Assembly: GCA_965235115.1 (NCBI GenBank)
Contig: OZ249443.1
Location: forward strand, 20,150,001-20,214,000
Direction: 5' to 3'
Length of the DNA: 64,000 nt
Source of the DNA: Laetmonice hystrix
Taxonomy: Eukaryota
The notes beneath the pieces were generated by a model. That model was not told where the DNA came from. It saw nothing but the letters and a program-made list of their open reading frames with translations, and did not search any database. Below, piece by piece: positions 16,977 through 34,600 of this stretch. Position 1 is the first letter of the stretch. The number at the start of each line of letters is the position of its first letter. The position numbers and the translations under genes were made by a program.

Positions 16977-18024
16977 TAACGTACGGTGGCAGTAAAGACA
17001 CGACTACGTTTTGTGGGGAGCAATAACTGTAGATTCTTTACTTTGCATCTGTACACAGTGCCAGTACAACCCGGAGGATAAGGCACACGAACACAACCAA
17101 AATATACAGTATTGGCTATAACTGATGTATGCTTGATGATGTGTGGTTCACGTCTGGTTTGCAGGACTTGACCACACGTACGTTCCTCAATGGTAGAGCA
17201 GAATGAATGAAGTCTTTGAGATACACTGCCCACTGTTACTGAATACTGAATGTTCACGCACTAACTCACCAGGCAGAGTTTTTGGGATGTGGTGAAGCTG
17301 AGTGATGTCTTTGGCGTCGGACAAGCGTAATGGCGTTGTCGAGCAGGTAGAGTTCCTTAGGATGTGTGAAGTTGTTTCCAGCAGGCAAAGATGTGTGTCT
17401 TACCAAATTGTAGGATGAGTATATATAGGGAGGACCAATGTCAAACTGACCAATGATATATAACATAAAAATGCTGGTCATCTATTGGCTACACCATCAC
17501 AGGGCAGGCCTGTTTGAGGATTGTCCATTTGTTGTTAAAGCCAAGTGAGTTGGCACTGGCAGACAGTCTAATGAGCAGTGATTACTGAGGCCGACATCCT
17601 GGCACTAGTGAGCTGCTTCACAGAGGTGGGAAACAATAGGTGAGAAAACACCTGTATTACGGGTTCCCTGTGATGAGCGACTCTGCCCCTATGACTGTAC
17701 TGCCTTCATTAATAAAACAACCTCCCAAACGAAAGCTGGGGAAAACCATCAATGGAGAACATATGTCACCCAAGAGATTACATTGTTTGTAAACCTAAGA
17801 TGCTGGTAGCAGACAATGAATACAAACTGAACATCTGAGAACGGTGGTTAAATCCTTAATGCACCACGACATGGTTGGTAAATGTCTATAATGAACATCT
17901 AATCTTTCTGGGTGTAAATCAAACGTATACAATTTACAACTAAACACAAGAATTGTCTCTGACATAAGTTGTCTGTTCATTATTTTGAGCAAGAGTGGCC
18001 CATAGTGAAACTAGGGGTACGATA
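16977..18024 (-). repeat. 3' LTR (1048 bp)
   Basis: Apparently identical to 25516-26563 (three identical ORF-track translations at constant offset); 8-bp imperfect terminal inverted repeat TAACGTAC...GTACGATA. Confidence 0.95.
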
Positions 18025-18026
18025 TA

Positions 18027-18038
18027 TCCCCCTCGCTC
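18027..18038 (-). other. Polypurine tract
   Basis: Minus strand GAGCGAGGGGGA, separated from the 3' LTR by 2 nt. Confidence 0.8.
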
Positions 18039-18376
18039 AACTGAGATTGGAGCATCCAATCTCTAAAGGACAAAAATATACCTACGCTATAGTTCTCGGA
18101 CTATGTCAGAATTACGACTGTACTTATACGTAACATGACTTCTTCTTCTTTTTTTTTATATACAAAACATATCATCAATGCAAGAGCTAAATACTAGTAT
18201 ACAGTCATACCCGGCATTTTGGTATGGCAAAAGTATAGGACACAATATACATAAGGGATCGTGTCGATTGGTAATGACACGCACTGAATATCCCAGGGAG
18301 ATGCTTGAACAGACAGATTGTAAAGCATCTCTTCTTGGCGGTGTTTTCCAGAACACACAGAATGCCTTTCAGTATA

Positions 18377-18665
18377 TATGGTGTTCGGCATGAAATGTTT
18401 ATGCAACACCCTTGTTGTTGACCACATGAAAGTTTATGTGTATCACCGTATTGGACACATGGAAAGTTTATGTGTTCGTTGTATTTTCACACGTTTTTCA
18501 TTTCATTTCTTGAAGGTTGTAGTATGGTGTTCGGCATGAAATGTTTATGCAACACCCTTGTTGTTGACCACATGAAAGTTTATGTGTATCACTGTATTGA
18601 ACACATGGAAAGTTTATGTGTTTGTTGTGTCTTAACACTTTTTCATTTCATTTCTTGAAGGTTGT
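18377..18665. repeat. ~146-bp tandem duplication in the element 3' UTR
   Basis: TATGGTGTTCGGCATGAAATG...CTTGAAGGTTGT at 18377 and 18523. Confidence 0.85.
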
Positions 18666-18885
18666 CAACTGTTGAAATGATGACGGTTGACACATTGTTG
18701 ACACATTATTTGCTTGTTTTTGCTTGCTTCTTGTTTCTCTTGTTGGTTGCTGTTACATTGTTGTCTGATGTCTTGGAGATCTTACGTGGCTTGACTGGAT
18801 TGGTAGGGTTGTTTGAGTTAACCAGGGGTGAGGCGAAACCATAGGTACCATGACAGTTAATTACCGTTTGTCGCAAACCTTCAGC

Positions 18886-19620
18886 TTAATCAGGGTGGGA
18901 CAGTACACCTGTTAACATGGGGACGCACTGTTTGCAGGGTTTGAGGCATACCTGGACGTAAAAGCTGAATTGGGCGTGGCGGACAAATAGTAGGGCTTGA
19001 AATTTTTGTTTTAGAATGGATTTTAGTTTTAGGGCTTGCCAGGGGGAAATGGACAATTGTTCTGGCAATGGGACATCTTGGTTAGACAAAGTGTTGGTGA
19101 TGGACAGATCCTGCCAGTTAATATATAGGACGGGGCGTATGGAACCTTTGACATGGACGTCTTTTAGCCATAGGGATGCTTGGAAGTGGAAGTTTCTAGG
19201 GCAAATGGGGACATCTACGATTGGGACTTTCACGCACTTAGGACCGGTGGACAATTCAATAAAAATGGTCGAGTGGTGTTTGTTGCGCTTGTAGGCTTTG
19301 TACAGCAGGAGACCAACTGTGACCATTATGGCGAAGGTCACCATGTACGATGCAATATCATGCGTACATATGTCTACGGGGGAAGGGGTGGGGATGGTGG
19401 GTTGGGCTGTCGATGGGAATAGGTGGATTACTTTGTCTACAGCAAGTGCATGGGCTGCTTTTGTTTGTTTGAGTATTGACACATAAGCAATTAGTGTGCG
19501 GTATTTCCAGAAGAGAACTACTGTTCCTAGTAAGGATATACCACTAACGATGATGGGGATGAGGGTCCACCACCATGTAGTAGATGACCAGAGGATTGAG
19601 CCCGGATCAGCCCCCAATGC
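18886..19620 (-). pseudogene. env: env C-terminal fragment (TM anchor, second TM, ~115-aa extra domain)
   Basis: ORF 18886-19662: WWWTLIPIIVSGISLLGTVVLFWKY, second hydrophobic helix IASYMVTFAIMVTVGLLLY, then a beta-rich-looking domain. Located just before PPT/3' LTR in element orientation. 5' boundary (inversion junction) is approximate. Confidence 0.7.
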
Positions 19621-19895
19621 CCCAAAATCTGCCACAGGATAGCCAAAACAACTCCCAAACAACTACTACAGACGGTCACCCCACAGATGACCTACCGGAC
19701 AATGCAGAGGTATCGGATATCATCAAGTCAGGAAAGGTGCAGAACAGAAAGGCATATAAAGTGAGACTGAAGGACAAAAGAGGTCCCATCTGGCTATATG
19801 CTGAGGATGTACCTGACGCCATGAAAAGAACATTTCACATACAAAGGACACAAGCAGGAAAGAAAAGAAAGAGAAAGAAAGTTACACGTCAGTAA
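19620..19895 (+). pseudogene. Inverted integrase C-terminus (chromodomain-like fold plus basic tail)
   Basis: EVSDIIKSGKVQNRKAYKVRLKDKRGPIWLYAEDVP..FHIQRTQAGKKRKRKK resembles chromodomain-like ends of gypsy integrases and is followed by an A-rich spacer and env, the expected pol-env order. Confidence 0.6.
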
Positions 19896-19911
19896 AACAA
19901 AAACAAGAACA

Positions 19912-19942
<31 letters not shown>

Positions 19943-19965
19943 TCGAAAACAGCAAACAAACAATC

Positions 19966-19996
<31 letters not shown>

Positions 19997-20355
19997 GGAG
20001 GAGAAAGTGGCTTCCAACAAACCCCCCACCCCCCAACCACCCCTAAAATTCATGTGCTTTATATGAAGTGCTTTAGTGCCAGTTGTTTCTACAAAACTTG
20101 TGCCAGACCGTTAACAGTGTCACCAACAGAGCATCACTCGACGAGTCGCTTCTTTTACTTACAACTTGAGTCATACGGTTAAGTTTTAGAGTACAGTATA
20201 CCTGTCAGAGATCACTGTAAAGAGGATATTGCTTCGGTTGCCGACGGCGTGCTAACCCCAAAATCTGTGTCCAGAAAGGGCAGTGGAGCTTCATGTGCAC
20301 ACACCCTCATATCATCCATTATTCGTGCCTCATTCATTAAGGCTCTGCTCCCTAT

Positions 20356-21534
20356 ATGTTCACAGATTGCTGGGAATTAGCTACTCCCCGGGGCGTGCGC
20401 GCAACAAGCAGTCGGAGCTCTGTACTCGGCACAGTGCGGACAGGACTGATCATAGTACTCATTTACACCGTCATGATCTCAACCAAGATTCAAGCTATGG
20501 ATGTGGTTCAGCGACCCAACTACGGAATATTATTCCAACCCGCTGGCCGTATGCAAGCCACCTACAACAAGTGGTCGCATACTTTCCAGTTAACCATGCC
20601 CCAACGTCTGCAAGTTAACAGTACCAGCGTATCATGTCCTGAAACCACGTCCCATCATCCATGTTCAGCTTTAGTAAAGGCTCTTCAACGTGCCCATGCG
20701 ATACGCATGCGGACAGCCTCAACACTAAACATTTTACGCGACCAGATTATAGCACTCGTACCAAAGAGCAGAGCAAAACTCTCTCTCTCACGGTCCAAGC
20801 GAGCGTTACTACCAATCATCGGTGAACTGGCCCATTCCTTATTCGGAACAGCAACAGAACAAGAAGTAGAAACACTGGCAAGACATATCATAGCACTAGA
20901 AAAGCACTCCGACAAACAAGCGGCCGCTTTTGCACGTCACTCTGAGGAAATGTCTTCCTTCATGGCTGCAACAACAGAGCACTTTGAAAGTCTCACGGCT
21001 GAAATTCTAGAGAATCATCAAGCCCTAAATGATGTCTCTTTTACCCTACGTAGCTTTGGCCTGGCCACACAAGCGGCAATACAATTATCAATTGCTTTGG
21101 CAGAGGATGCTCACTTAACAGGTCAACTACAGCAACAATTCTCACTCATGTTCCAAGGCGTCCATGAGCTGACTCAGCATCGTCTCTCGCCATCACTACT
21201 ACCACTACAAATTCTCGAACACACCCTGGACAATATCAAGAACTTGCTAGCAACCAGCCACCCAGAATTTAAAATCGCTATCAGAGCCAACCACATTTAT
21301 GATTCCAAGGATTTCTTTTGGGCTTTCAGAAACAACTCGATTTTCATTACAATCAATATTCCACTTCTAACTCAGGCTGTGGTGCTGAACGTATACAAGG
21401 TCATCTCAGTACCAGTACCACTGCACACAAATTCTGAGCAAGTGACTCAACTTCTGGACACACCACGATACATAGCCTTCAGCTCAGATGGACTATATTA
21501 TACCATCCCAGACCCAGACAAATGGTTATCATAA
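20356..21534 (+). pseudogene. env: Inverted env N-terminal fragment, baculovirus-F/errantivirus-type class I fusogen (392 aa, truncated)
   Basis: Signal peptide LIIVLIYTVMISTKIQA, furin site RSKR (20791-20802), fusion-peptide-like ALLPIIGELAHSLFGTATEQE, heptad-rich helices. Ends at the junction with pol; no TM. Confidence 0.85.
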
Positions 21535-21540
21535 TTATCG

Positions 21541-24061
21541 TAGGGAGGGTTCCTTTGCTTAGGTATGTGTAAATGTGCCTGAAGTCTGGACACTCCTGTT
21601 GTGCGGCTGAAATAGTTGACCTGTCCATGCCAACAGGTGTCACTGCCGTTATTTCAGCGTTTGGTTGGGTAACTGTTCCTTGGTATTCAAATGATGCCTG
21701 CCACTGTTCATATAGGTTAGGCTGTTGTGGAATGGGTGTGCAAGTGAGAACTTCTCCATCAAGGTGTTCCATTATGGCACTCTTGGGATGTGGTGTGCTT
21801 TGGCTGTCATTGTATGGTCGACGTGAGAGGCCATCTGCATTAGTGTTAGCCACTCCTTTCTTGTGCTCGATGGTGAATGTATAGCCTTGTAGATTTAGTG
21901 CCCATCTGCATAACCTTGGGTTTTTGTGTTTAAAGTTCATTACATGTTTTAGTGCTTGGTGATCGGTCACGAGTTTAAAGGGTCGATGTGAGAGGTATAC
22001 GTGGAAGGCTTCTATGGCTTCTACGGCTGCCAAGCACTCCAGTTCAGATATTCCACGTTTGTATTCTGCACCGCGTAGGGATCGTCCTCCATAGCATACC
22101 GGATGTTCCTTTCCTGTACTATCTATCTGACTTAAGACATAGCCAATGGCACTACTGGACGCGTCAGATGTTACTATGAAGTCTTGGTTGAGGTCCGGAT
22201 AAGCTAAGACGGGGGGGTTTGTGAGACTTTCCTTGAGTTTGCTGAATGCCAGGGAACATTCTTCTGTCCAGACGAATTCAATATCTTTTTTAAGCAAAGC
22301 TGTTAATGGTGCCGTAGTTGTACTGTATCCGTCAATGAAGCGCCTGTAGTAATTAGCAATTCCCAGAAATGATCTCACTTGTTTTGGTGTTTTGGGGACT
22401 GGAAAGTCCGTTACTGCTTTGATCTTCTCAGGGTTGGGCAGGATTCCATTAGATGACAGGATATGACCCAGATAAGTGACTGCATTTGTACCAAAGCGAC
22501 ATTTTGTGGGTTTGGCTTTAAGGTTTGCCTTCCTTAACCTATCGAAGACTTGCTCCAAATCTTTCATGTGTTGGTCCACATCTGAGCTGAACACAATGAT
22601 GTCGTCGACAAATCCTGCCATAATTTTGTATACGAGTCCCCTGAAGACTTCAGAGACGAGTTTTTGGAAAGAGGTGCTAGCATTTCGCAAACCAAATGGC
22701 ATACGGTTCCAGGCATACTCTCCCTGTTGTGTCACGAATGCGGTTTTGTCTTTGCTGTCGGGATGGACTGGTATTTGCCAAAAAGCACCGGCCAGGTCTA
22801 TGACTGTATAGATTTTGGCTTTTCTTTGACCAATCGCATCCCATATGTCTTCCAAGCGGGGCATGGGGAAGCTCATTGGTTTGGTTACTGCATTGACATG
22901 TCTGTAGTCGACCGCAAAACGATAGGATCCATCACGTTTTTTCACTAACACGACGGGCGATGTCCACTCTGAAGTTGAGGGTTCAATGAAGCCACAAGCA
23001 AGCAATTCCTCAACTTGTTTATCTATTTCTTCTCTTACCTTAGGCGAGGCCCTGTAGAATCGCTTTGCTTTGGGAGGTGCATCACCTGTGTCTATTGTGT
23101 GGGTCATGAGTTGTGTGCATCCTATGTCAGAGACGTCTGTTGCAAAAACATCAGAGTGTTTAAGTAGGAATTGTCTGAGTCTATTCTTGTCATAGTCAGA
23201 CAACTCAGGATTTTCAACGTCAGGATCAAATGCAGCATTGCCTTGTGTGTTACGTTGTGGCTGATGTTGAACGTCTGTTTCATCACTTTCTTCGGCTATA
23301 GTCATGACCTGAGCTGGGGACATGCGACGTGCAATTCCAATGGTTGACATACCTGGTATGCGGACGGATTTACTTGTATTATTAATGATACGACATATTA
23401 TCGGTTTGTTGTCTTCCACTTCAACTAATGTTGGAATTACAGAGAATTGTGACCCTTTAAGTGTGCTCTTTCCTGTTGGTTCAATCAAGAACGGGTCCGT
23501 ACATGTTGTTGATAATTTGACCCGTACTGCTGTTACTGAACGTGCTGGTATCTTTTCAGGTTTTGTGGTTCTGACCAAAGTCGCCTTATTTGAGAGTGGG
23601 CCTAGAGGTAATGATATGCCTCTGTCCAGTGTTAATGTCCCATTCTCAAGGTTAACAATGGCTTTGTGTGCGGTCATGAAATCCATGCCTATTATTAGGG
23701 CGTGGTGACCTTGGAGCACGTGGAAGGGGTGACTAAATTCTGTGGTTCCTGCCTTGAATTTCAGGAGTATGCAGTCTAGCACCTTGTGTGTTTCTCCTCC
23801 CACACCTCTGACCGAGTTGTATGTGGGTCTCACTTTTGTGTGATTTCTCATAGATATTTTGTTGATCAGATGTGCAGAAATACATGAAATTACTGCACCT
23901 GTGTCTATGAGGGCTTGAACTGATAGTTGGCCTATCTGTACAGGTAGTGCCTGGTCATACTCTAGGTTGGTAGTAGACATTAGGTCAGCTGTTGGACCTT
24001 CTGTTTCAAGACTTTGCCTGTCCTCACATGTCATTTGACATGAAGAAACAGGCGCGAATTC
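21541..24061 (-). CDS. pol: pol: aspartic protease, reverse transcriptase, RNase H; integrase truncated
   Basis: ORF 21479-24034: LIDTGA (PR); YRFAVDYR, MPFGL, FVDD (RT); TSDAS, ELECLA, TDHQAL, NADGLSR (RH). Breaks after QQECPDFRHIYTYLSKGTLP with no HHCC or DDE motifs. Frame stays open up to the gag TAG. Confidence 0.92.
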
Positions 24062-25360
24062 CTATGCGGAATATTGGTGGTTGGGTGGGATTTGGGCTCG
24101 GTTTTTGTAGGACTTCTGGTGGTGGGGTCGGGGATGGTAATTCTGCTGAGGGTGGGATTGGAAATTCTGCTGAGGGTGGGGTTGGAAATTCTGCTGAGGG
24201 TGGGGTTGGAAATTCTGCTGAGGGTGGGGTTGGAAATTCTGCTGAGGGTGGGGTTGGTAATTATATTGTGGTTTGCCACGACACATAAAGTACCAATGGT
24301 TTTCCTTTCCACAAGATTGACAATTGTGACCCCTGGCTAAACAATCCTTACCTCGTCTGCACTCGATTTGTCCACAATTGGCGCATATGTCTGTCTGTTG
24401 ATGCTGTTGAGTATAGTTGTGTTGGTTGCGTCTGGGTTGTCTCTGTTGGCTTGGACCTTGGTGACGTGGTTGGCCCTGGTAGCTGTCTTCAGGTTGTGAC
24501 CATCGTCCCGTGGTGGGTGACGTCATCTGGGCTGTTGATGGGACGGCTGAGTTGACTTGAGCTGCCCTAGTCAAAGATGCCACCTCAGTTCTCAGCTGAT
24601 CAATTGATGTGAGGACTTCTTGGTTGAGCGTTGTGGTGGCTGAAGCAACTGGGATGGCTACTTGCAGTGCCGCGCAATCAATTACTTGTTTCGGCGTTCT
24701 GGGATTCGCTTGCCGAAAAAATGGCAAGAATTCCGGCCTGAGTCCAGATTCTATGATCTGGACAATGTTAGTATCATCCAGATCCAAACCTTTTGCAGCC
24801 AGCACTACTTCATTTACATAATCTGGCACTGATTGCCCTAATTTTTGTTGGCTGGTAGCCAGTTGTCTAAACTTTAGTCCTCTGTTGGGGCGTTTTGGAC
24901 CATTTATCCAATATGCTTCAAATGCTGCTGACAGACGTGTGAAGCTCTCCTGGTCGGCCTTCGGCAACGTCCGGTACCAGGTTTCCCCGTCACCGGTAAA
25001 CATAAAACGTACCGCTGCTGCTGCTTGTCTGTCATTTTTGTTATTCCATGTTGTCATGGCTGTGACGTCATCCAGCCAGTCTTGGGGGTTGATGACTCCA
25101 TCAAAGCTTTTAGGCATCATCGCCATCATCATGGTGTCGTCCCACTCAGTGTCGGCTTCTTCCTGTGCTATTTCGTCCTCTTCCTCGTGGACGACTGGTG
25201 CCGGGTCGGGCACAGGGTGGGGCGGTACTATTGTTCTTTTAGTACCCTCTATTTGGGGTATGCCGTTGGTTGCAGCCTGAGAGCGTGTTGCTGCTGCTGG
25301 TCCTAGTGGTAATTTGGCTGACACTGCCCTTTGTATGGGATTATTGCATGGGGCTGACAT
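24062..25360 (-). CDS. gag: gag (432 aa) with CCHC zinc knuckle
   Basis: FDG...QDWL..V..MT.W / A.TWY retrotransposon-gag motifs; CANCGQIEC...CQSCGKENHWYFMC knuckle; five PHPQQNFQ-type repeats encoded by a 24-bp tandem at ~24131-24258. Confidence 0.9.
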   Translation of the reverse strand: MSAPCNNPIQRAVSAKLPLGPAAATRSQAATNGIPQIEGTKRTIVPPHPVPDPAPVVHEEEDEIAQEEADTEWDDTMMMAMMPKSFDGVINPQDWLDDVTAMTTWNNKNDRQAAAAVRFMFTGDGETWYRTLPKADQESFTRLSAAFEAYWINGPKRPNRGLKFRQLATSQQKLGQSVPDYVNEVVLAAKGLDLDDTNIVQIIESGLRPEFLPFFRQANPRTPKQVIDCAALQVAIPVASATTTLNQEVLTSIDQLRTEVASLTRAAQVNSAVPSTAQMTSPTTGRWSQPEDSYQGQPRHQGPSQQRQPRRNQHNYTQQHQQTDICANCGQIECRRGKDCLARGHNCQSCGKENHWYFMCRGKPQYNYQPHPQQNFQPHPQQNFQPHPQQNFQPHPQQNFQSHPQQNYHPRPHHQKSYKNRAQIPPNHQYSA

Positions 25361-25498
25361 GCCACATTAAAATAACTGAATTTTGATGATTTCGGCACTC
25401 ACACTAACGGTGCACCAACAACTGTCCACAGATACAAAACTGCTCACCGAGAATCAGTTGCCACTGCTTTCCCAACCAGAGTTAGGCAAAACGAGACA

Positions 25499-25513
25499 CC
25501 GGATTCTCCACCA
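25499..25513 (-). other. Primer-binding site, tRNA-Ala
   Basis: Minus strand TGGTGGAGAATCCGG, 2 nt from the 5' LTR. It is complementary to a tRNA 3' end ...ATTCTCC-A-CCA with U70, the G3:U70 alanine identity element. Confidence 0.8.
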
Positions 25514-25515
25514 AT

Positions 25516-26563
25516 TAACGTACGGTGGCAGTAAAGACACGACTACGTTTTGTGGGGAGCAATAACTGTAGATTCTTTACTTTGCATCTGTACACAGTGC
25601 CAGTACAACCCGGAGGATAAGGCACACGAACACAACCAAAATATACAGTATTGGCTATAACTGATGTATGCTTGATGATGTGTGGTTCACGTCTGGTTTG
25701 CAGGACTTGACCACACGTACGTTCCTCAATGGTAGAGCAGAATGAATGAAGTCTTTGAGATACACTGCCCACTGTTACTGAATACTGAATGTTCACGCAC
25801 TAACTCACCAGGCAGAGTTTTTGGGATGTGGTGAAGCTGAGTGATGTCTTTGGCGTCGGACAAGCGTAATGGCGTTGTCGAGCAGGTAGAGTTCCTTAGG
25901 ATGTGTGAAGTTGTTTCCAGCAGGCAAAGATGTGTGTCTTACCAAATTGTAGGATGAGTATATATAGGGAGGACCAATGTCAAACTGACCAATGATATAT
26001 AACATAAAAATGCTGGTCATCTATTGGCTACACCATCACAGGGCAGGCCTGTTTGAGGATTGTCCATTTGTTGTTAAAGCCAAGTGAGTTGGCACTGGCA
26101 GACAGTCTAATGAGCAGTGATTACTGAGGCCGACATCCTGGCACTAGTGAGCTGCTTCACAGAGGTGGGAAACAATAGGTGAGAAAACACCTGTATTACG
26201 GGTTCCCTGTGATGAGCGACTCTGCCCCTATGACTGTACTGCCTTCATTAATAAAACAACCTCCCAAACGAAAGCTGGGGAAAACCATCAATGGAGAACA
26301 TATGTCACCCAAGAGATTACATTGTTTGTAAACCTAAGATGCTGGTAGCAGACAATGAATACAAACTGAACATCTGAGAACGGTGGTTAAATCCTTAATG
26401 CACCACGACATGGTTGGTAAATGTCTATAATGAACATCTAATCTTTCTGGGTGTAAATCAAACGTATACAATTTACAACTAAACACAAGAATTGTCTCTG
26501 ACATAAGTTGTCTGTTCATTATTTTGAGCAAGAGTGGCCCATAGTGAAACTAGGGGTACGATA
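25516..26563 (-). repeat. 5' LTR (1048 bp)
   Basis: Direct repeat of 16977-18024, followed by the GCGT TSD. Confidence 0.95.
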
Positions 26564-28618
26564 GCGTTATCAAAGGCCCTGTCTGTACTTTTTCTTTCAA
26601 TAAGGATAAAGGATTGTTCAAAGTGATAAGTTTCTTTCTCTCATCCTCACTAATACCTTCTTGGACTCGGTTCCCCCTGGAAAGATTACGTTATTACATT
26701 GTATTCTCGCCTGGCTGGCTGAAATACTGCTGACAATGACATGACATAAACCTCCTAATTCTCTCCGCTAGCGGGTGAACTCCCCCCCCTCCCCCTCCCT
26801 TCCACCCCCCCCCCCCCACCCCACCACCCACCCCTACTGACAGAGCCAGCAGACAGACTAGCTAACAACATCATTACCTGGACAACTCCCAGTCCACAAT
26901 TAGCTTCGTTTGATGCCAGACTCCAGGCAGAGGATTTGATCTTTGCCACCAGTCTGTGAACACTTGTAAATTATACGCCGCCGTGTGCGCCGACTGGGGT
27001 AAAGGGAGCGACTAGGGCGTGAACAAGCTGCCCAAGTAGGAAGGGTTCTTACCCCTATTCCTGACGGATATCAGTGACAGGTTCTACCAAATCTGAAGAA
27101 CATAAGTAGGTAACAGACAACACTGTCCGTCACAAATGTTCCATGTCGCCTTCAATTGGGACTCAAGGACACCGGAACATGGGCTACCATGTTCTTTAAC
27201 CCTCCCAGAGAACATCACGGCTTGTCACACAGCAAGGTCCTTCGGATGGCACTTGAGGAAAATGATTCTTTGACCTTTCAAAAAAAGTTCCTGTTGCACT
27301 CAGGCTTCGCTTGGCTCTGCTGAGATCAACAAATGGATCTGGCACGGCCGGGCACATTAAATTAACAGATAGAAAAAAAATAATACTTTTAACAAGAGGA
27401 TAGGAACATTCTGTCTTCCGTACGATTTTTCCCGAAGTAATTGCCACGGAACATTTGCAGGCTTTGGTGTATTACATGTTGTAAAAACATTACACTGGTG
27501 CTACAAAATCCGAAATATGACACTGACACTTGTGTACATCCTGATCGACCCTGACATTTTGTCACCACGCAATCCAAGTAAGCCAGGACAGGTTGCCGTC
27601 GCAGAGACGGACTGGATCAGTAGCAAGCAAACATTCCACTACTTGGAAAAATATCTACAGGCAAAAATCTAAAACCTTCAAAAACATTTCTACTTTCTGC
27701 TTATTTTTTTATTTGGGGTGGGGGTGGAGACTGATGTGTTTGTAACTTTCCTGCTCAACAACCCTGGTGTACCACCATCCAGCACATCAAATAATAACAG
27801 TGATGTTGGAAGCATTTTTTTATTTTTTATTTATTATTATTATTATTTATTTGGGGGGGGGGGGCAACTAGGCCATGTTCCAAGAGCATTTTAGATTGGG
27901 GGGGGGGGTGGGGGCAGACTATGTTTTGCCCCAGTTTCTTTGCCTTTGGTGGTGGGGCCATGGCCCATGGACCCCCCCCCCCCCCCCCTTTCCGACATCA
28001 CTGAATAATTGAACAATTGTTACGCTCTTTGGTGCAGCCCCCCAGCCTTAAGAACATGACGTCATCACTAATGATGAGACGGGTCCTTCTTTAAGCACTA
28101 CTCCCTGATCCAAACATGTTGCACCTAACAAACAATGTATCCTAACTCAGTGGAATCTTACCAGACACTGCTGCCCTCTCGTGGCAACATTTGATGTAGC
28201 AAATCGATAAGATTCCCCTGGTGGTAAATCATCGAACCACTACTACAGAGACTATTGTGAAGCACTCTCAAAATAACAGCTTGGGATTTCGAAACAAAAC
28301 ACAATAATATCTCTCATAGCTGCTAAAATGAACAACGGCTATAACAACGGCTAATATAAAAATAAAGTTACATTCAGGAATAGCATCTACTGTGCTGCCC
28401 CCTGTCGGTGGCTGTGGTGACGTGTTGTCCAAAGGTTGAGGAAGTAATTAAAATAACATTAATTCCCGAGAGGTAACCTTGGTTGACTGGGCCTCATATA
28501 GACAATATCACAGTCCCTCAGGGCGGCACAGTATTAGGATTTCTGAGGGTTGAACAAGTCTGACAGGATCACAGAGTAATGCCCCGAGCAGTGCAATACC
28601 AAAAAGACTTGTGCCTAC

Positions 28619-31600
28619 CTGCAAAGTTGTTCTGCATTGTTCAAGTTCAAGTACTTCTTTATCGTCAAAACAACAAGTGGGCCTGAAAAAAACGTATTTC
28701 CACGGATATTTAAATATTTTCCATTTAATTGACTACAAAATTATGTAAAATAGTCACATATCTTCCAAGGACCAAGGACCGAGCAAGGACCACTTAAAAA
28801 TGTTTGGTTGCCACAAGGTCAGCAAAACTATTACTTTTCAAATACCCAAGATTATAGCCGACCAGTATATTAGCTGTGAATACTTACGCCAGCTTTGAGG
28901 CATTCTGTTAATAGCTAGTGGTTCAAGGTGATCAAATGTTGCATCTAGAATCTAAAAATAACAAAAAAACAATAAAAGTTATGAGTTTGAAGAAAAGCTC
29001 CATTCAGAAACATTAAAAAATGTTAAAAGTTCTAAAAGACCAACTCGGGGCAAAGCCAGCTTACCATTACGAGTGTAATCCACACAGAACGCAAAATAAC
29101 TTGTCGCCATCGGTGTTCTAACTCTTCAACAAAACGTTTGGCTAACAACAGTTGTTGACCTAACTCTGGTCTGGATGTGCATGACGAGTAAGGTAACCTA
29201 CCACAGAGCGGACGTCAGGGTAGTTCATGGCAGCCCATGTGGCTGGGTAACCTCCTATAGACCAGGCGAAGAGGATAATATCTTCAGGTTTGAAACCAAG
29301 ACGGTGGATGGCGTACTGCATCACCACATCGATGGCACACTGCTCCTGGTCGGGGAATGGCACGCCCTGAGTGTGGGGACAAACAACAGGTCATTGGAAC
29401 GGGTATTCAGGCTTGCTCTGGTACAGAGAAAAAAAATTGTGTGATCTTGTACCGCTTACTTTTGCCTTAGTGACGTCATTAACTCATTATTATGACTTAG
29501 TGACTTACGCTTATTTCAGAGAAAAAATGGCATCTCTTAATTATGAGATCAACACACACAAAATTTCTGAAACGACTTTTTTTTTTTCATGTCCCCAACA
29601 GGGAAGAGTAGTATAGATCTAGAAATTATATATAAAAAAAAATATACGCCCCAAAAAAAGACATGCAAAGTTTTTACAAATATTGTCTGAAATACTGCTG
29701 AAACCCTCCCTGACAGGAATGTGATACAGACCGTGCTACCTCCAAATCCTGGGTGGTTCCAGCCAAGCACCGAGTACTGCGCCTCAAGTGGTGTCACCAT
29801 CCACCCAATCTCATAGAACCCTGCATTCCCCTCACTACAGATCACCTAGAGACAAAAATACATCAATGAATAAATTATTAAACACAAAGTGTTGGCATGG
29901 TTACTGCAAAGAGAGGTCAGTACTTCAAATTTGGGAATTAAAAATTACGGTTTTGCTTTTTACTGATTTTAAATTAAAGAGATCCAATCTGAGATGAATT
30001 TGCAAACGTGCAAAAAGAACGATATAGTTGGAATTTTTCTAACATAACATGGATCCCTTTTAAAGAAATATGATTCTGTTTGCCTAACTTACCGGTAGTC
30101 TTACAAGCATTTATTGGAACAAATATTTACCACAACATTCATTGTCCTAATGGCTACATTTTTTGAGATGTCAATATTTTCTACGTTTGTTAATGAATGT
30201 TAGCCAATTTTTTTTTTTTAGCCAAGTAACATCAAGACAAGTACAATAAACATACCAACTTGTTCCCATTAGAAAAATTGGGATCATTTCTTCTATCAAC
30301 GAACATCGATTCTATTTCATTCCCATCTTCTGCAAGTAGCTTACTCCTCTGACCATTTTTCTAGAAACATAAAAGAAAAGTAAGACCAAAGCCTTAGATC
30401 CTCACGGGAAATCTCTTAGAAAAACAACCTGAAGAATGAATGTCATTAATCATCAAATATTTCAACTCCGAGGTTCACTCATTCTGGTAATGGTAACATT
30501 CTATTATTTTTTTTTTTAGATTCTAGATGCAACATTTGATCACCTTGAACCACTAGCTATTAACAGAATGCCTCAAAGCTGGCGTAAGTATTCACAGCTA
30601 ATATACTGGTCGGCTATAATCTTGGGTATTTGAAAAGTAAAAAAAAAAAAAATAAATAACATTCTATTATTCTAAGGGTTAGAAACTGCTATTATTCTAA
30701 TTTGAAGAATCATTTCACTCAAACTTACCTCTTCAACTAGTTTAGCACGTCCCTGTACCAAGACTGGAGCTGAGGGGTATCAACAGGAATTATTTACATA
30801 CCCCTCCGTTATTATGTGTTGTTTTTTTTATATATGCAATCACATTCTAGAGATATCTGATTTAATGAATGTGCAAAAACCATGTTTTCATCTAAAAGTA
30901 AAATGATCTGTATGACTCAAACATTACAGGATTGGACAAATTTTTGTATGAGTCACTGGTCCAGGACCAGTAACTCAGAATATTTACTGGTCCTGCTCTT
31001 GTTTGGTAGGAAGGTTGGTAGGAAACTCCACAATTGAGTGTTTATGGAAGTGTTAATTATCTGTCATTGCCATTACAGGCCACAGACCTGTAGCATCGTT
31101 GGAGGTTGGAGGATTGTGACCTGCTACATGCCTGGCACAATTAGGCTAATTTCTGGTTTCTTATAATTATGTGCTCATTAACTCACAGAGTAGGACTTGC
31201 ATAGATGTGGCTCCGGGGTAGACCATACGACGACCGAACGTATGGACTGCTATGTAGCTGCAATTAATTACAAATAATGGAAATACAGCCACGTGTCGTT
31301 AAAATTAATGCACTTCTTTAATCCACATACTTAACAATCCAAACACACTTTCTGGTAGCCTCTTCTACCATTTTCTATTTAAAATCCATACGTTTCAAAA
31401 TCCGAACACATTTTAGCAGGCACCAAGCTGTTCCGATAAATGAGGTCGGACTGTATAATGAATAAAGATACCAGAGAACATCTACTGCTAACTCAGAGAA
31501 AAATAGTCTTCAAGCAGAATATAACTGGTGTTGAATGTAGAAAAAAGTAAAGGATTTCTACCTTAGAATATGGCAAGGAAGAGTGCGGATTTTATCAACG

Positions 31601-34600
31601 ATACCACGCGACTTTCTTGTCCATGGTACACTTTTCTTAACCTTTTTCCCCCTGCAGCAAAAAAATCATATTCATAATCTCAGTAAAATCACAATGGTTG
31701 CTTATAAGTACCCGAAATTCCAGTTAAGATTGAAAAAATTCTACCCAACACTAGATTCTACTGGCCTATTCTTGCTGTAACGTAATGCCAACCTTGCAAT
31801 ATAGCTAATGAAAAATCTATCTTACTTTTCACAGACTTAATATTAACTATTTGTCTTTCTGTTAAAAAAAAGAACTTTTAGATATCGAGTTCATGAAAAA
31901 CATTCATGCTAAGGTTTTGTTTTAAACCGGCCTTATTGACACCTTGATACTAATTTATCAAAAACCTTATTTACTTACCTAACAAATACTTCAGTCCATC
32001 GGAAGTCTATTGGCCATGGACCAAACTCACTGTCATATCCAGCAAGCTTTCGCTACAATTACAAGTGATTGTAACATTTTGATTACCCAAACCAGGGGTG
32101 CGTTGCATAAAAAACCCTGCCCGTTAAATCCGCCGCTAACGGTCAGTTAACGGGACGTTGCGTTGCATAATAAATTCCCACCCGCTAATGTTCCCGGTAA
32201 CTGTTGTATTTTAACGGGTACCTAAAAGGTCCCCGCTATTTTAACGGGACATTTTAACGGAGCGGGCGGGGATGTTTTTATGCAACGGGCCCCAGTGTAT
32301 ATAAAAATTCTATTATAAGTATAAGTAAAGGCCCAGATACACAGACAGACCGATTTTGAGATACGGCCAAATCTCAAAATTGGCGTAAATTTGTCTGTGT
32401 ATCTGGGCCTTTAGAGGCAGTCAAAGTTGAGAACTCAGCACACATTATACTATTTATCGCATTTTCAATCAGTATTCTTTTTAATGTTCTTCTTTCTCAG
32501 CATCCATGAAAATATTTACAGCAGAGAAAAGTTTCTGTGCCCCTAAAAGTTTCTATTGATGAATACGTACCCTGGTGTCTGCAGTGTAATTGTTCGTGGC
32601 TTCACTCAACACTGACGTAAACAATACATAATCTGGATTCATCCATCGACCAACGCCTGTCAAATACATCAATAAATCAACCTCTATGACAACTTGTATA
32701 GAAAAGTCCATCTTGGGTTCGAGTTGATGGTAACGGTTAGGCTTTGCAAGGAAGCATGTTGCATTTGTTTCGCAAACCTGATGTATTACTGAATCTTTTA
32801 CATAAATAAATGACGATATTTAGTTAAAGACTCTACCTACCTCGTAGGACTATGGCGGTGTAGTAAAATGCCATTATGCTACCAACAAACTTTGACATCC
32901 ATATAGCACCCTCAATAGTGAAAAAATCTACAAAACGACAATGGTATAATAATCGTTTAAATAGAAAAAATCGTTTAAATAGAAAATCTACAAAATGACA
33001 ATGGTATAATAATCATTTAAATAGAAAAAAATGACATAAAAAGACAGAAACATAAATTATTCAAGAAATGCAAGGCAGGGTTTGGAGGCACGAGGTGGAC
33101 ATACTTTTCCTGTAGAGGTAAGTCAGTAGAACCGGAGAGGTCCAGTAAGAGAAGGCTTTGAAGAAACGGATCTGAAAGACAGAAAAATCTTCATGAAGAT
33201 AATCTTATAATTACGGTAATCAGATCGTGTCTTCAAATTCTTGGTACATTGATAACTTCAGAGCAATCTTAACTCCACAAAAGGCAAGCAATATAATAGT
33301 ATCTTTGCATTAATCTGCATTGGAAACAGCAAAGTACAAAATGCATGGAAGCTGTGGAAAATTAATAGGCCTATCAATAAACTAAATGTTCCTTCAAAAC
33401 TTACCCATTTGACAACACTATCTGCTGTGCTCTCTAACCCATTAGGAATGTAGTTTGTGCGCTGGAAAAGAAAAAGATGTTGCTGGAAGTTCAAATTTTT
33501 CAACATCAAACATGCTGCTTGTCATCCTTAGAGTTAGAAAAGGAAATATATAGTTTCAACTTAAACTGCTGAACAAAGTCTTATCTAACAAAAAATTAAT
33601 GTTCTTCAAAATCTTTCATGTGATACCAGTAATGAACATCAGCTGTTGTCAAATTTGCACAAGGTGTACTTTAAATTTCTAACATAATTTTTGTTATTCA
33701 GATAACAAAAAAAAAAACATTTAAAAAAAGACAGGTAATACCAAACCCTTTTAACACCTTAGCAGTTAAGGAAGCTGGATCAAGGATGACATACGATATT
33801 TTATTTGAAGCCTTTTATTTCGTCAAAGATGGGTGGGTGCATGGGTGCATCCCTTAGCTAGGCCCCAGACCCCTACCCCGAGTTCCCACATCCTATGTAT
33901 ATACAGTACATGATGAAAGCTGAAGGGTAGAGGCAATATGAGCTAGGCACTACTTCAGTCATGGATTTAGTCGGGCACAGGGGACATGCCCCCCCCTGGC
34001 AATTTTTTTTTCAAAAGCAGGGTCCCTCCATCATCCATACTGAACATGAACAGAAGTAGGATAAGTATCGCGTTCTGCTCATCCATCCCCCCCCTCAAAA
34101 AAAATCCTGGATCCGCCACTGTACCACATCTTAGACACTACTGCCGGTAGCCTACAATATCGGCCTCTACTCAGACTTGTCTGTTATTTTTAATATTAGT
34201 GCCTTCAGTGTGGTAGACATGCAGTTGGTCCCTCCTCCATGGAGCTCATTACTTGGGGTAGTGCCAGTTACCAGTCAGCAAAATTCGCTGACAACCAATG
34301 ATTGATGAGAATACCAGTTACTGTGAGCAGCAGCAACTGTGAGCGGCAGTTGTGAGCGGCGGTCACAGTCACATATGAGCGCATGGATAGCATGCTAGAT
34401 GTTTCACATATAATCTAATTGGTAACACAACATGTCCGTCAGTCGCAATGTCCGCAAGGATCGTGTATACCATTACCTGCTATAGTAATAGTATTAAACG
34501 ATCCGGGATGAACGCCCGGTCATGTCCGCCCCTCGCCGCTCTGCTCGAAGCGCCCGGCAAGGGACATGCTGCGTTACGGTGTGGCTCATCACATGTCCGC

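What the first reader, a model, noticed from the sequence alone, without database searches (positions are those of the whole stretch)
30494..30671. A gene carrying a perfect antisense copy of one of its own exons in an upstream intron
Seen: ~128 bp covering exon 13 (28888-28951), its acceptor and ~57 bp of donor-side intron is copied with no mismatches, inverted, into the intron between exons 9 and 10. It is flanked by a 15-bp direct repeat, with a T-run on one side and an A-run on the other. Inference on origin: a recent templated insertion at a staggered break (local DNA or pre-mRNA template; polymerase-theta repair or LINE-type capture). Inference on effect: the pre-mRNA can fold into a ~128-bp duplex that hides both splice sites of exon 13 and loops out exons 10-12, including the catalytic-Ser exon, favouring skipping, circRNA, ADAR editing or endo-siRNA.
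Basis: partly seen in the sequence, partly recalled or inferred. Interest (0 to 1): 0.75.

Follow-up and report, generated by a model that had tools for sequence, protein, structure and literature searches.

The report
Young antisense exon copy inside own gene
A worm lipase gene (ABHD16 family) carries a very recent 163-base insertion in one intron. The insertion is a perfect backwards copy of one of the gene's own later exons, so the gene's RNA could fold on itself. Whether that changes splicing or editing has not been tested.

Summary
Window 30513-30640 is an exact 128-nt reverse complement of 28831-28958, which holds 7 nt of acceptor, the 64-nt exon and 57 nt of donor-side intron. These are the only two copies in the 627-Mb genome.

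The copy sits in a 368-nt intron of a minus-strand ABHD16-family lipase gene. It is flanked by a perfect 15-bp target-site duplication.

Of the 11 T's, only 4 are unexplained. Two belong to the duplication and 5 are copied from the source. The right side carries a real untemplated tail, A12-T-AAA.

The layout is therefore duplication, insert, A-tail, duplication, which is the signature of target-primed reverse transcription. The template reads in the sense of the gene's own pre-mRNA and the copy lies antisense to the gene.

Weighing against a standard LINE event:
- The source lies only 1.5 kb away in cis.
- The copy has no poly(A) signal.
- The genome's dominant LINE ends in (CACT)n, not poly(A).
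- Poly(A) retrocopies look rare here.

DNA-level template switching remains a live rival.

DNA contigs from the one available sample indirectly indicate both a filled and an empty allele. No RNA data were available. The predicted duplex is -231 kcal/mol. Effects on splicing, circular RNA or editing are plausible but untested.

The parts
30494..30508 (.). Left copy of the 15-bp target-site duplication, TAACATTCTATTATT
   Evidence: D14, 100% identical pair; only 4 occurrences in the 627-Mb genome.
30509..30512 (+). Four filler T's at the left junction, found neither in the duplication nor in the source
   Evidence: The exact copy starts at 30513 and the duplication ends at 30508.
30513..30640 (+). 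Exact 128-nt copy of TTTTTAG, exon and 57 nt of intron. It reads in exon sense on the + strand, so it is antisense to the host gene
   Evidence: 128/128; tblastn also hits 30520-30585 on the + strand.
30641..30656 (+). Untemplated tail A12-T-AAA, directly before the right duplication copy
   Evidence: The source continues TAGTTTTG instead; no DNA template for the tail in the window.
30657..30671 (.). Right copy of the 15-bp target-site duplication
   Evidence: D14.
28831..28958 (-). Source segment: last 7 nt of the upstream intron, the 64-nt exon and the first 57 nt of the downstream intron
28888..28951 (-). Skipping it shifts the reading frame
   Evidence: tblastn of ABHD16 homologues, 26 of 27 hit.
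30361..30728 (-). Host intron, 368 nt now and 205 nt before the insertion. The insertion lies 57 nt after the donor and 133 nt before the acceptor
29202..29366 (-). Exon with the nucleophile motif WSIGG (GxSxG), one of the three exons enclosed by the two arms
   Evidence: ORF translation; 416 homologues; full-length homologues carry ABHD16_N and Abhydrolase_1.
30256..30360 (-). First enclosed exon, 105 nt. Its acceptor would be the back-splice acceptor
29732..29845 (-). Second enclosed exon, 114 nt
30543..30620 (-). Possible cryptic 78-nt exon created in the sense RNA. A U13 tract and AG precede it and AAG|GTGATC follows it. It contains an in-frame TGA
   Evidence: a consensus count only. This is inference and was not tested.

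Best explanation
This is a real, very young insertion allele, probably still segregating, and not an evolved regulatory device.

Most likely origin: a staggered break opened in the intron, with nicks 15 bp apart. The 3' end of the minus strand (...GAATGTTA) was extended by a reverse transcriptase, first on an A-tract, which gave the A12-T-AAA tail. It then ran along 128 nt of the gene's own unspliced, probably nascent, pre-mRNA, from GAAAAGUAA back to UUUUUAG. The far end was joined with 4 extra T's, and fill-in produced the 15-bp duplication. The copy therefore lies antisense to the gene.

Shown: the anatomy, the two-copy status and the gene identity.

Inferred: the RNA template, the enzyme and the use of a nascent transcript.

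Predicted consequence, untested: in transcripts where the 368-nt host intron is still present when the exon 1.5 kb downstream is made, a 128-bp perfect duplex forms. It would be a substrate for ADAR-type hyper-editing. It could also lower use of that exon's splice sites, giving frameshifting exon skipping or back-splicing of the 384 nt of enclosed exons. The antisense U13 tract could also create a cryptic poison exon. The net effect would be a mildly hypomorphic or neutral allele.
For: - Exact 128-nt inverted copy, a perfect 15-bp duplication and 16 untemplated A-rich bases abutting the right duplication copy.
- Only two copies in the genome, and the duplicated 15-mer is not repetitive.
- No DNA template for the tail within 64 kb.
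- The layout matches the LINE-type class 1 of templated sequence insertions: a duplication of at least 5 bp plus 10-40 untemplated A's (PMC5110952). Extra 5' T's are known from twin or dual priming variants (PMC2837659).
- The genome holds a very active endonuclease/reverse-transcriptase LINE. It gave over 1100 candidate matches, many with intact 1230-aa frames, and it makes 10-13-bp duplications.
- Youth: 0 differences in 143 compared bases, in a sample with about 1.6% allelic differences.
- Empty allele: contig X2 record 14 leaves the reference at 30502. That is the position predicted for an empty-site contig whose right part can only be laid from 30666, because the tool masks 30628-30665.
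- Filled allele: bin depths imply a left-junction contig in X1 and X3.
- Duplex -231.5 kcal/mol; the fold of the filled allele is 206 kcal/mol lower than that of the empty one.
- A_deamin domains are present in the genome.
- Inverted intronic repeats are documented to promote loop-out exon skipping (PMC13019027).
Against: - There is no AATAAA or ATTAAA in the last 40 nt of the copy, so the RNA was not a normally polyadenylated transcript.
- The nick site (TGTTA^CC) is not T-rich.
- The abundant LINE ends in (CACT)n, not poly(A).
- In 226 kb scanned, no other insertion combines an A-run with a duplication of 11 bp or more.
- No L1-type ORF1 was found, although the controls for that search also gave nothing.
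- Three ribosomal-protein families have no processed retrocopies.
- A source 1.5 kb away in the same gene is what DNA-level template switching predicts. For an RT event it needs the extra assumption of a nascent local transcript.
- Read support is indirect. It comes from contigs only, from one sample, probably the assembled one. The right junction was masked by the tool.
- No RNA data exist, so every functional step is prediction.
- The host intron may be spliced out before the second arm is transcribed.
Confidence: 0.45

Rival explanations
1. DNA-level template switching during replication or break repair (MMBIR/FoSTeS or polymerase-theta end joining). A 3' end at the break annealed by microhomology to the exon region 1.5 kb away, copied 128 nt of DNA, and returned. 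The 15-bp duplication would come from re-entry upstream or from fill-in.
For: - The source and target are 1.5 kb apart in cis and inverted, which is typical for such switches.
- There is possible microhomology: the target end ...TTATT matches the source ...GTTATTTTTAG, and TAA lies at the other junction.
- Poly(A) retroposition looks rare in this genome.
- The copy keeps both intron flanks, so nothing requires an RNA template.
Against: - Sixteen untemplated A-rich bases sit exactly between the copy and the duplication, with no DNA template in the window.
- A clean 15-bp duplication is not the usual outcome of polymerase-theta joining.
- The insert is much longer than typical polymerase-theta fillers. 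This rests on established knowledge and was not tested here.
Confidence: 0.28
2. Mirror-image or twin/dual-priming event on an antisense transcript. In this reading the true tail is the left T-run, the template was a + strand RNA of the exon region, and the right A12-T-AAA is a second, abortive priming on poly(A).
For: - The + strand 3' end ...CTATTATT is T-rich, which suits priming.
- TTATT can pair with AAUAA in the + strand sequence CTAAAAATAAC at the arm's edge.
- An AATAAA lies on the + strand at 28971-28976, just past the arm.
- An architecture with both a 5' poly(T) and a 3' poly(A) is described for L1 (PMC2837659).
Against: - Only 4 T's are unexplained, against 16 bases on the right, so the right side looks like the real tail.
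- No evidence of antisense transcription could be obtained.
- It needs two priming events instead of one.
Confidence: 0.1
3. Assembly or sequencing artefact: a chimeric read or a collapsed or mis-joined haplotype, with no such allele in the animal.
For: - No listed contig spans the insertion.
- Depth over 30540-30666 is near zero in all three runs, and contigs end at 30493.
- All runs come from one sample, probably the one that was assembled.
Against: - An artefact would not create a perfect 15-bp duplication with an A-tail.
- The near-zero depth is expected, because the copy's 31-mers are identical to the source's and were laid there. Source-arm depth is raised in X1 and X3.
- Bin arithmetic requires a contig over about 30464-30542, the left junction, at full depth in X1 and X3.
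Confidence: 0.05
4. A selected regulatory element: an evolved intronic antisense 'selector' that controls use of the exon or makes a functional circular RNA.
For: - The geometry is ideal for masking the exon's splice sites.
- Earlier scan notes report shorter intronic antisense exon copies in other genes of this genome (unchecked).
Against: - Perfect identity, an intact duplication and tail, and a probable empty allele in the same sample all mark a new mutation, not a conserved element.
- Skipping the 64-nt exon shifts the frame of a conserved hydrolase core.
- No relatives were available to test conservation.
Confidence: 0.04

Closest known systems
Class 1 templated sequence insertion polymorphisms (LINE-1 ORF2p-mediated insertion of non-LINE RNA fragments, including intronic ones; Onozawa and Aplan, PMC5110952)
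   Same: A short fragment of cellular, unspliced sequence is inserted with a target-site duplication and a 10-40-nt untemplated A tract. It is probably polymorphic.
   Different: This copy has no cryptic poly(A) signal upstream of the tail and no TTTT/A nick site. The donor is 1.5 kb away in the same gene rather than at a distant locus. The host is an annelid-like genome whose dominant LINE is not of the poly(A) type.
Twin-priming and dual-priming L1 insertions with 5' poly(T) (Meyer et al. 2010, PMC2837659)
   Same: A duplication-flanked insert with T's at one end and A's at the other.
   Different: Only 4 T's are unexplained here, there is no LINE sequence in the insert, and such a variant is not needed to explain the locus.
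Inverted intronic repeat pairs (for example inverted Alus) that loop out exons and cause exon skipping, circular RNAs and A-to-I editing (PMC13019027; PMC2533698)
   Same: Two complementary arms in one pre-mRNA enclose exons. The predicted stem is long and very stable.
   Different: Here one arm is the exon itself with both its splice sites. The arms are 100% identical, not the 70-85% typical of repeat pairs. The pair arose from the gene's own sequence, not from a repeat family. No RNA evidence exists.
Hairpin-RNA loci born by inverted duplication of their target gene (Drosophila hpRNA/endo-siRNA loci; from my own knowledge, not checked here)
   Same: An inverted duplicate of genic sequence that can produce long perfect double-stranded RNA against its parent gene.
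   Different: Those are separate transcription units with both arms adjacent. Here the arms are 1.5 kb apart within the parent gene's own pre-mRNA.

Membership tests
LINE-mediated orphan retrocopy / class 1 templated sequence insertion | Target-site duplication of at least 5 bp at both junctions | tested here: met
   Perfect 15-bp duplication (D14). The 15-mer is not repetitive.
LINE-mediated orphan retrocopy / class 1 templated sequence insertion | Untemplated A tract (10-40 nt) at the 3' end of the insert, abutting the duplication | tested here: met
   A12-T-AAA at 30641-30656 is absent from the source. No DNA template lies in the window.
LINE-mediated orphan retrocopy / class 1 templated sequence insertion | Poly(A) signal 10-30 nt upstream of the A tract | tested here: not met
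   There is no AATAAA or ATTAAA in the last 40 nt of the copy (read directly).
LINE-mediated orphan retrocopy / class 1 templated sequence insertion | Insertion at the endonuclease's preferred site (TTTT/A for L1) | tested here: not met
   The inferred nick is 5'-GAATGTTA^CCAT-3' on the minus strand. The preference of this genome's own LINEs is unknown: four duplications examined gave no consensus.
LINE-mediated orphan retrocopy / class 1 templated sequence insertion | Template from a distant, unlinked transcript | tested here: not met
   The source is 1.5 kb away in the same gene.
LINE-mediated orphan retrocopy / class 1 templated sequence insertion | A poly(A)-using LINE machinery active in the genome | tested here: inconclusive
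   An abundant intact EN-RT LINE exists but ends in (CACT)n. No other A-tail-plus-duplication insertions were found in 226 kb. RPS3A, RPL15 and RPS6 have no retrocopies. Only a tiny part of the genome could be read.
Polymerase-theta / microhomology-mediated templated insertion | Local DNA template, microhomology at both junctions, no target-site duplication, no untemplated homopolymer tail | tested here: not met
   The local template is met and microhomology is possible (TTATT, TAA). A 15-bp duplication and a 16-nt untemplated tail are present.
Inverted-repeat-driven exon looping (skipping, circular RNA, editing) | Stable intramolecular duplex between arms that flank exons | tested here: met
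   Duplex -231.5 kcal/mol. The minimum-energy fold of the 1981-nt pre-mRNA pairs the arms over 140 bp. This is a prediction only.
Inverted-repeat-driven exon looping (skipping, circular RNA, editing) | Observed skipped, back-spliced or edited transcripts | not testable with these tools
ABHD16-family phosphatidylserine lipase (host gene) | Alpha/beta-hydrolase core with a GxSxG nucleophile, and homology to proteins carrying the ABHD16 N-terminal domain | tested here: met
   WSIGG is in exon 29366-29202. There are 416 homologues. Full-length hits carry PF22990 and PF00561. A collinear exon series covers residues about 3-386. The C-terminal exons were not located.

The most novel reading that the evidence does not exclude
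A reverse transcriptase acting at a nick inside a transcribed gene used that gene's own nascent pre-mRNA as template. This would be capture in cis, driven by proximity, in a lophotrochozoan genome that otherwise makes almost no poly(A) retrocopies. In one step it would have created a segregating allele whose RNA carries a perfect 128-bp hairpin over an essential exon. That allele would be a natural starting point for self-targeting hairpin RNA, circular RNA or recoding by editing.
Probability: 0.2. Interest if true: 0.7.

Novelty: new variant of a known kind. Interest (0 to 1): 0.42.

Why it matters
If the allele is real and heterozygous, it is a ready-made natural experiment. The two alleles of one gene in one animal differ only by a perfect intragenic inverted repeat that covers an exon and both its splice sites. 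Allele-specific RNA-seq would then show directly how far a 128-bp duplex spanning 1.5 kb affects splicing, back-splicing, A-to-I editing and small-RNA production in vivo.

The origin also bears on how short templated insertions arise outside mammals. It raises the question of whether nascent transcripts at a break can serve as templates.

For the gene itself the likeliest outcome is modest: a neutral or mildly hypomorphic allele of a lipase.

Tried and rejected
- **Repeat family.** I checked whether the 128-nt unit or the 15-mer belongs to a repeat family. It does not: there are 2 and 4 genomic hits.
- **Known small RNA.** I checked whether the copied segment is a known stable small RNA, such as a snoRNA, that could explain its mobilisation. 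There was no Rfam match at E up to 1.
- **DNA template for the tail.** I looked for one nearby and found none.
- **Similar events in the window and fetched loci.** The window self-BLAST shows only an LTR pair and one tandem duplication. Scans for an A-tail plus duplication over 226 kb find only this locus, equal to a reversed-sequence control once this locus is set aside.
- **The SGPL1 lead.** I tried to locate the earlier-noted SGPL1 exon copy joined to a LINE stub through PF00282 hits. The one candidate region I fetched (C1:31.77-31.82 Mb) has no such inverted copy. The lead stays unchecked.
- **L1-type ORF1.** The search gave no hit, but the control genomes were also silent, so this is weak evidence.
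- **Lariat branch point.** I considered that the copy ends at a branch point, with the template being a splicing intermediate. The only A next to the boundary is 8 nt from the AG, too close to be a likely branch point, so I rejected this as unsupported.
- **Symmetric twin priming as the main model.** I first favoured it, then demoted it after counting that only 4 T's are unexplained.
- **C-terminal exons.** Exons of the gene below 28619 were not found by tblastn.
- **Read evidence.** Only contigs of three runs from one sample were available, and the tool masked 30628-30665. Neither a spanning contig nor the right junction could be shown.
Full report
**Observation.**
The longest exact match between the two places is 128 nt: 28831-28958 against 30513-30640, in inverted orientation. 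The repeat finder reports 143 nt at 97% (I1), but the extra 15 nt are only A/T-rich resemblance.
- A search of the whole 627-Mb assembly with the 178-nt feature finds these two places and nothing else. It is therefore not a repeat family.
- The 15-mer TAACATTCTATTATT flanks the insert perfectly at 30494-30508 and 30657-30671 (D14). It occurs only four times in the genome, two of them here. That is what a true target-site duplication looks like.

**Host gene.**
- The gene is on the minus strand. The exon 29366-29202 encodes ...FAWSIGGYPATWAAM..., a GxSxG nucleophile motif.
- This 55-residue peptide finds 416 proteins. Full-length hits carry the ABHD16 N-terminal domain PF22990 plus the alpha/beta-hydrolase fold.
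- tblastn of 27 full-length homologues gives a collinear exon series from 35081 down to 28618. It also hits the + strand copy at 30520-30585.
- The copied segment holds the last 7 nt of the upstream intron (TTTTTAG), a 64-nt exon (28951-28888) and 57 nt of the next intron starting GTAAGT.
- The insertion lies in the intron 30728-30361. That intron is 368 nt now and was 205 nt before. The insertion sits 57 nt from the donor and 133 nt from the acceptor.
- Three exons lie between the arms: 30360-30256, 29845-29732 and 29366-29202, 384 nt in all. The last is the nucleophile exon.

**Exact anatomy, and a correction.** On the + strand the parts are:

| Coordinates | Part |
|---|---|
| 30494-30508 | left duplication copy |
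| 30509-30512 | TTTT filler |
| 30513-30640 | exact copy |
| 30641-30656 | A12-T-AAA tail |
| 30657-30671 | right duplication copy |

- The 11-T run is 2 T's of the duplication, 4 filler T's and 5 T's copied from the source's polypyrimidine tract.
- The right side carries 16 bases that are absent from the source, which continues TAGTTTTG. These bases have no DNA template anywhere in the window.
- The structure is the classical duplication, insert, A(n), duplication. The insert reads in the sense of the gene's pre-mRNA and is placed antisense to the gene.

**Origin.**
- This layout is the hallmark of target-primed reverse transcription. In humans, non-LINE fragments, including intronic ones, inserted this way are called class 1 templated sequence insertions. 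They are defined by a duplication, 10-40 untemplated A's, a cryptic poly(A) signal and a TTTT/A nick site (PMC5110952).
- Two of those criteria are met here and two are not. There is no AATAAA in the copy's last 40 nt, and the inferred nick is GAATGTTA^CC. Extra 5' T's are known from twin or dual priming (PMC2837659) but are not needed for 4 T's.
- The genome has a very active EN-RT LINE. It gave over 1100 candidate hits, many with intact 1230-aa frames. Its copies make 10-13-bp duplications but end in (CACT)n, not poly(A).
- In 226 kb that I could read, no other A-run is followed by a duplication of 11 bp or more. A relaxed scan equals its reversed-sequence control.
- No L1-type ORF1 was detected, although the controls were also silent.
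- RPS3A, RPL15 and RPS6 each exist as one intron-bearing locus with no processed copies. Poly(A)-dependent retroposition in trans therefore seems rare here.
- The donor lies 1.5 kb away in the same gene, which random retroposition would almost never give. This points either to a nascent local transcript as template or to DNA-level template switching.
- I rank them as follows:

| Explanation | Weight |
|---|---|
| RT extension on an A-tract followed by the gene's own pre-mRNA | about 0.45 |
| DNA template switching (MMBIR or polymerase theta) | about 0.28 |
| Mirror or twin-priming version on an antisense RNA | about 0.10 |
| Artefact | about 0.05 |
| Evolved regulatory element | about 0.04 |
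| Something unrecognised | remainder |

**Age and allele state.**
- There are no differences in 128 + 15 compared bases.
- Only three runs hold this stretch. All come from one sample and one study, all are stored as contigs, and none is on record as RNA. Laid on 28000-31800 they cover introns evenly, so they are DNA. They show about 62 allelic differences in 3.8 kb.
- The copy's 31-mers are identical to the source's, so contigs break at the arms and were laid on the source only. In X1 and X3 the source-arm bins are raised (116 and 95, against about 57).
- Bins 30413-30539 and 30540-30666 require a contig over about 30464-30542, the left junction, at about full depth.
- In X2 one contig crosses the whole source arm without a break (28796-29372). 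Another, 385 nt long, fits 30227-30502 and then leaves the reference for 110 letters.
- The tool masks 30628-30665 and dropped one joint there. An empty-site contig would then be split exactly at 30502 | 30666, the 9th and 10th bases of the duplication. The observed end at 30502 matches this prediction.
- I read this as indirect support for both a filled and an empty allele in the sample. It is not proof. No listed contig spans the insert, and the right junction could not be assessed.

**Predicted effect.**
- The two arms give a duplex of -231.5 kcal/mol. The minimum-energy fold of the 1981-nt pre-mRNA segment pairs them over 140 bp. It is 206 kcal/mol more stable than the fold of the empty allele.
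- The duplex buries the AG, the whole 64-nt exon and the GTAAGT donor. Skipping that exon shifts the reading frame.
- A_deamin (ADAR/ADAT-type) domains are present at several loci. Inverted intronic repeats are documented to promote loop-out skipping (PMC13019027).
- In the sense RNA the insert also offers a U13 tract followed by AGs and a donor-like AAG|GTGATC. This could make a 78-nt cryptic exon with an in-frame TGA.
- All of this is prediction, because no RNA data could be obtained. The 368-nt host intron may often be removed before the downstream arm is transcribed, which would blunt any effect in cis.

**Verdict.**
- The origin inference is partly supported. The evidence favours an RT/LINE-like event over polymerase theta, but with unmet criteria and a strong DNA-based rival.
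- The functional inference is geometrically sound but untested.
- The locus is best seen as a newborn, probably segregating structural allele. It is a new variant of known templated insertions, and its main value is as a natural experiment.
- The scan had noted other intronic antisense exon copies in this genome. I could not check them.

Noticed in passing
window 30195-30225: On the minus strand, an A12 run is flanked by a direct repeat TTGGCT|A12|TTGGCT. It is followed by AACATTC, so TAACATTC, the first 8 bases of the insertion's target-site duplication, recurs 290 nt away next to another A-run. It is the only one of 71 A/T runs in 226 kb with a flanking direct repeat. The other haplotype lacks 10 of the 12 A's. 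It could be a poly(A)-only abortive insertion, a hint of endonuclease site preference, or chance.
   Followed up: partly
G000 loci L015-L022 (for example C3:2573000-2582000): A very abundant, young LINE family gave over 1100 candidate endonuclease matches. Many copies are 96-99.7% identical and keep an intact 1230-aa EN-RT frame. They have a (CACT)n 3' tail and 10-13-bp target-site duplications. Copies cluster on contigs C3, C4, C5 and C11.
   Followed up: partly
window 29397-29523, 30921-31174, 31302-31555: Summed contig depth reaches several thousand to about 30,000 in the read sets, against about 50 elsewhere. These intron segments are high-copy short repeats, and many contigs end or rejoin there.
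   Followed up: no
window 29632: All three read sets lack 16 bases that the assembly has in an (AT)n/A9 stretch. This is either the other haplotype or a local assembly difference.
   Followed up: no
window 16977-26563 and below 28619: The C-terminal exons of the ABHD16-like gene (residues after about 386) were not found between 28619 and the young LTR retroelement. The retroelement may sit in an intron of this gene or just downstream of it.
   Followed up: partly
window 27843-27988: Long G-runs and C-runs form inverted repeats (G12 and C16 arms about 60-80 nt apart), downstream of the last exon that I located.
   Followed up: no
whole genome G000: RPS3A, RPL15 and RPS6 each occur as a single intron-containing locus with no processed pseudogenes. 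This suggests very little poly(A) mRNA retroposition in this annelid-like genome.
   Followed up: partly
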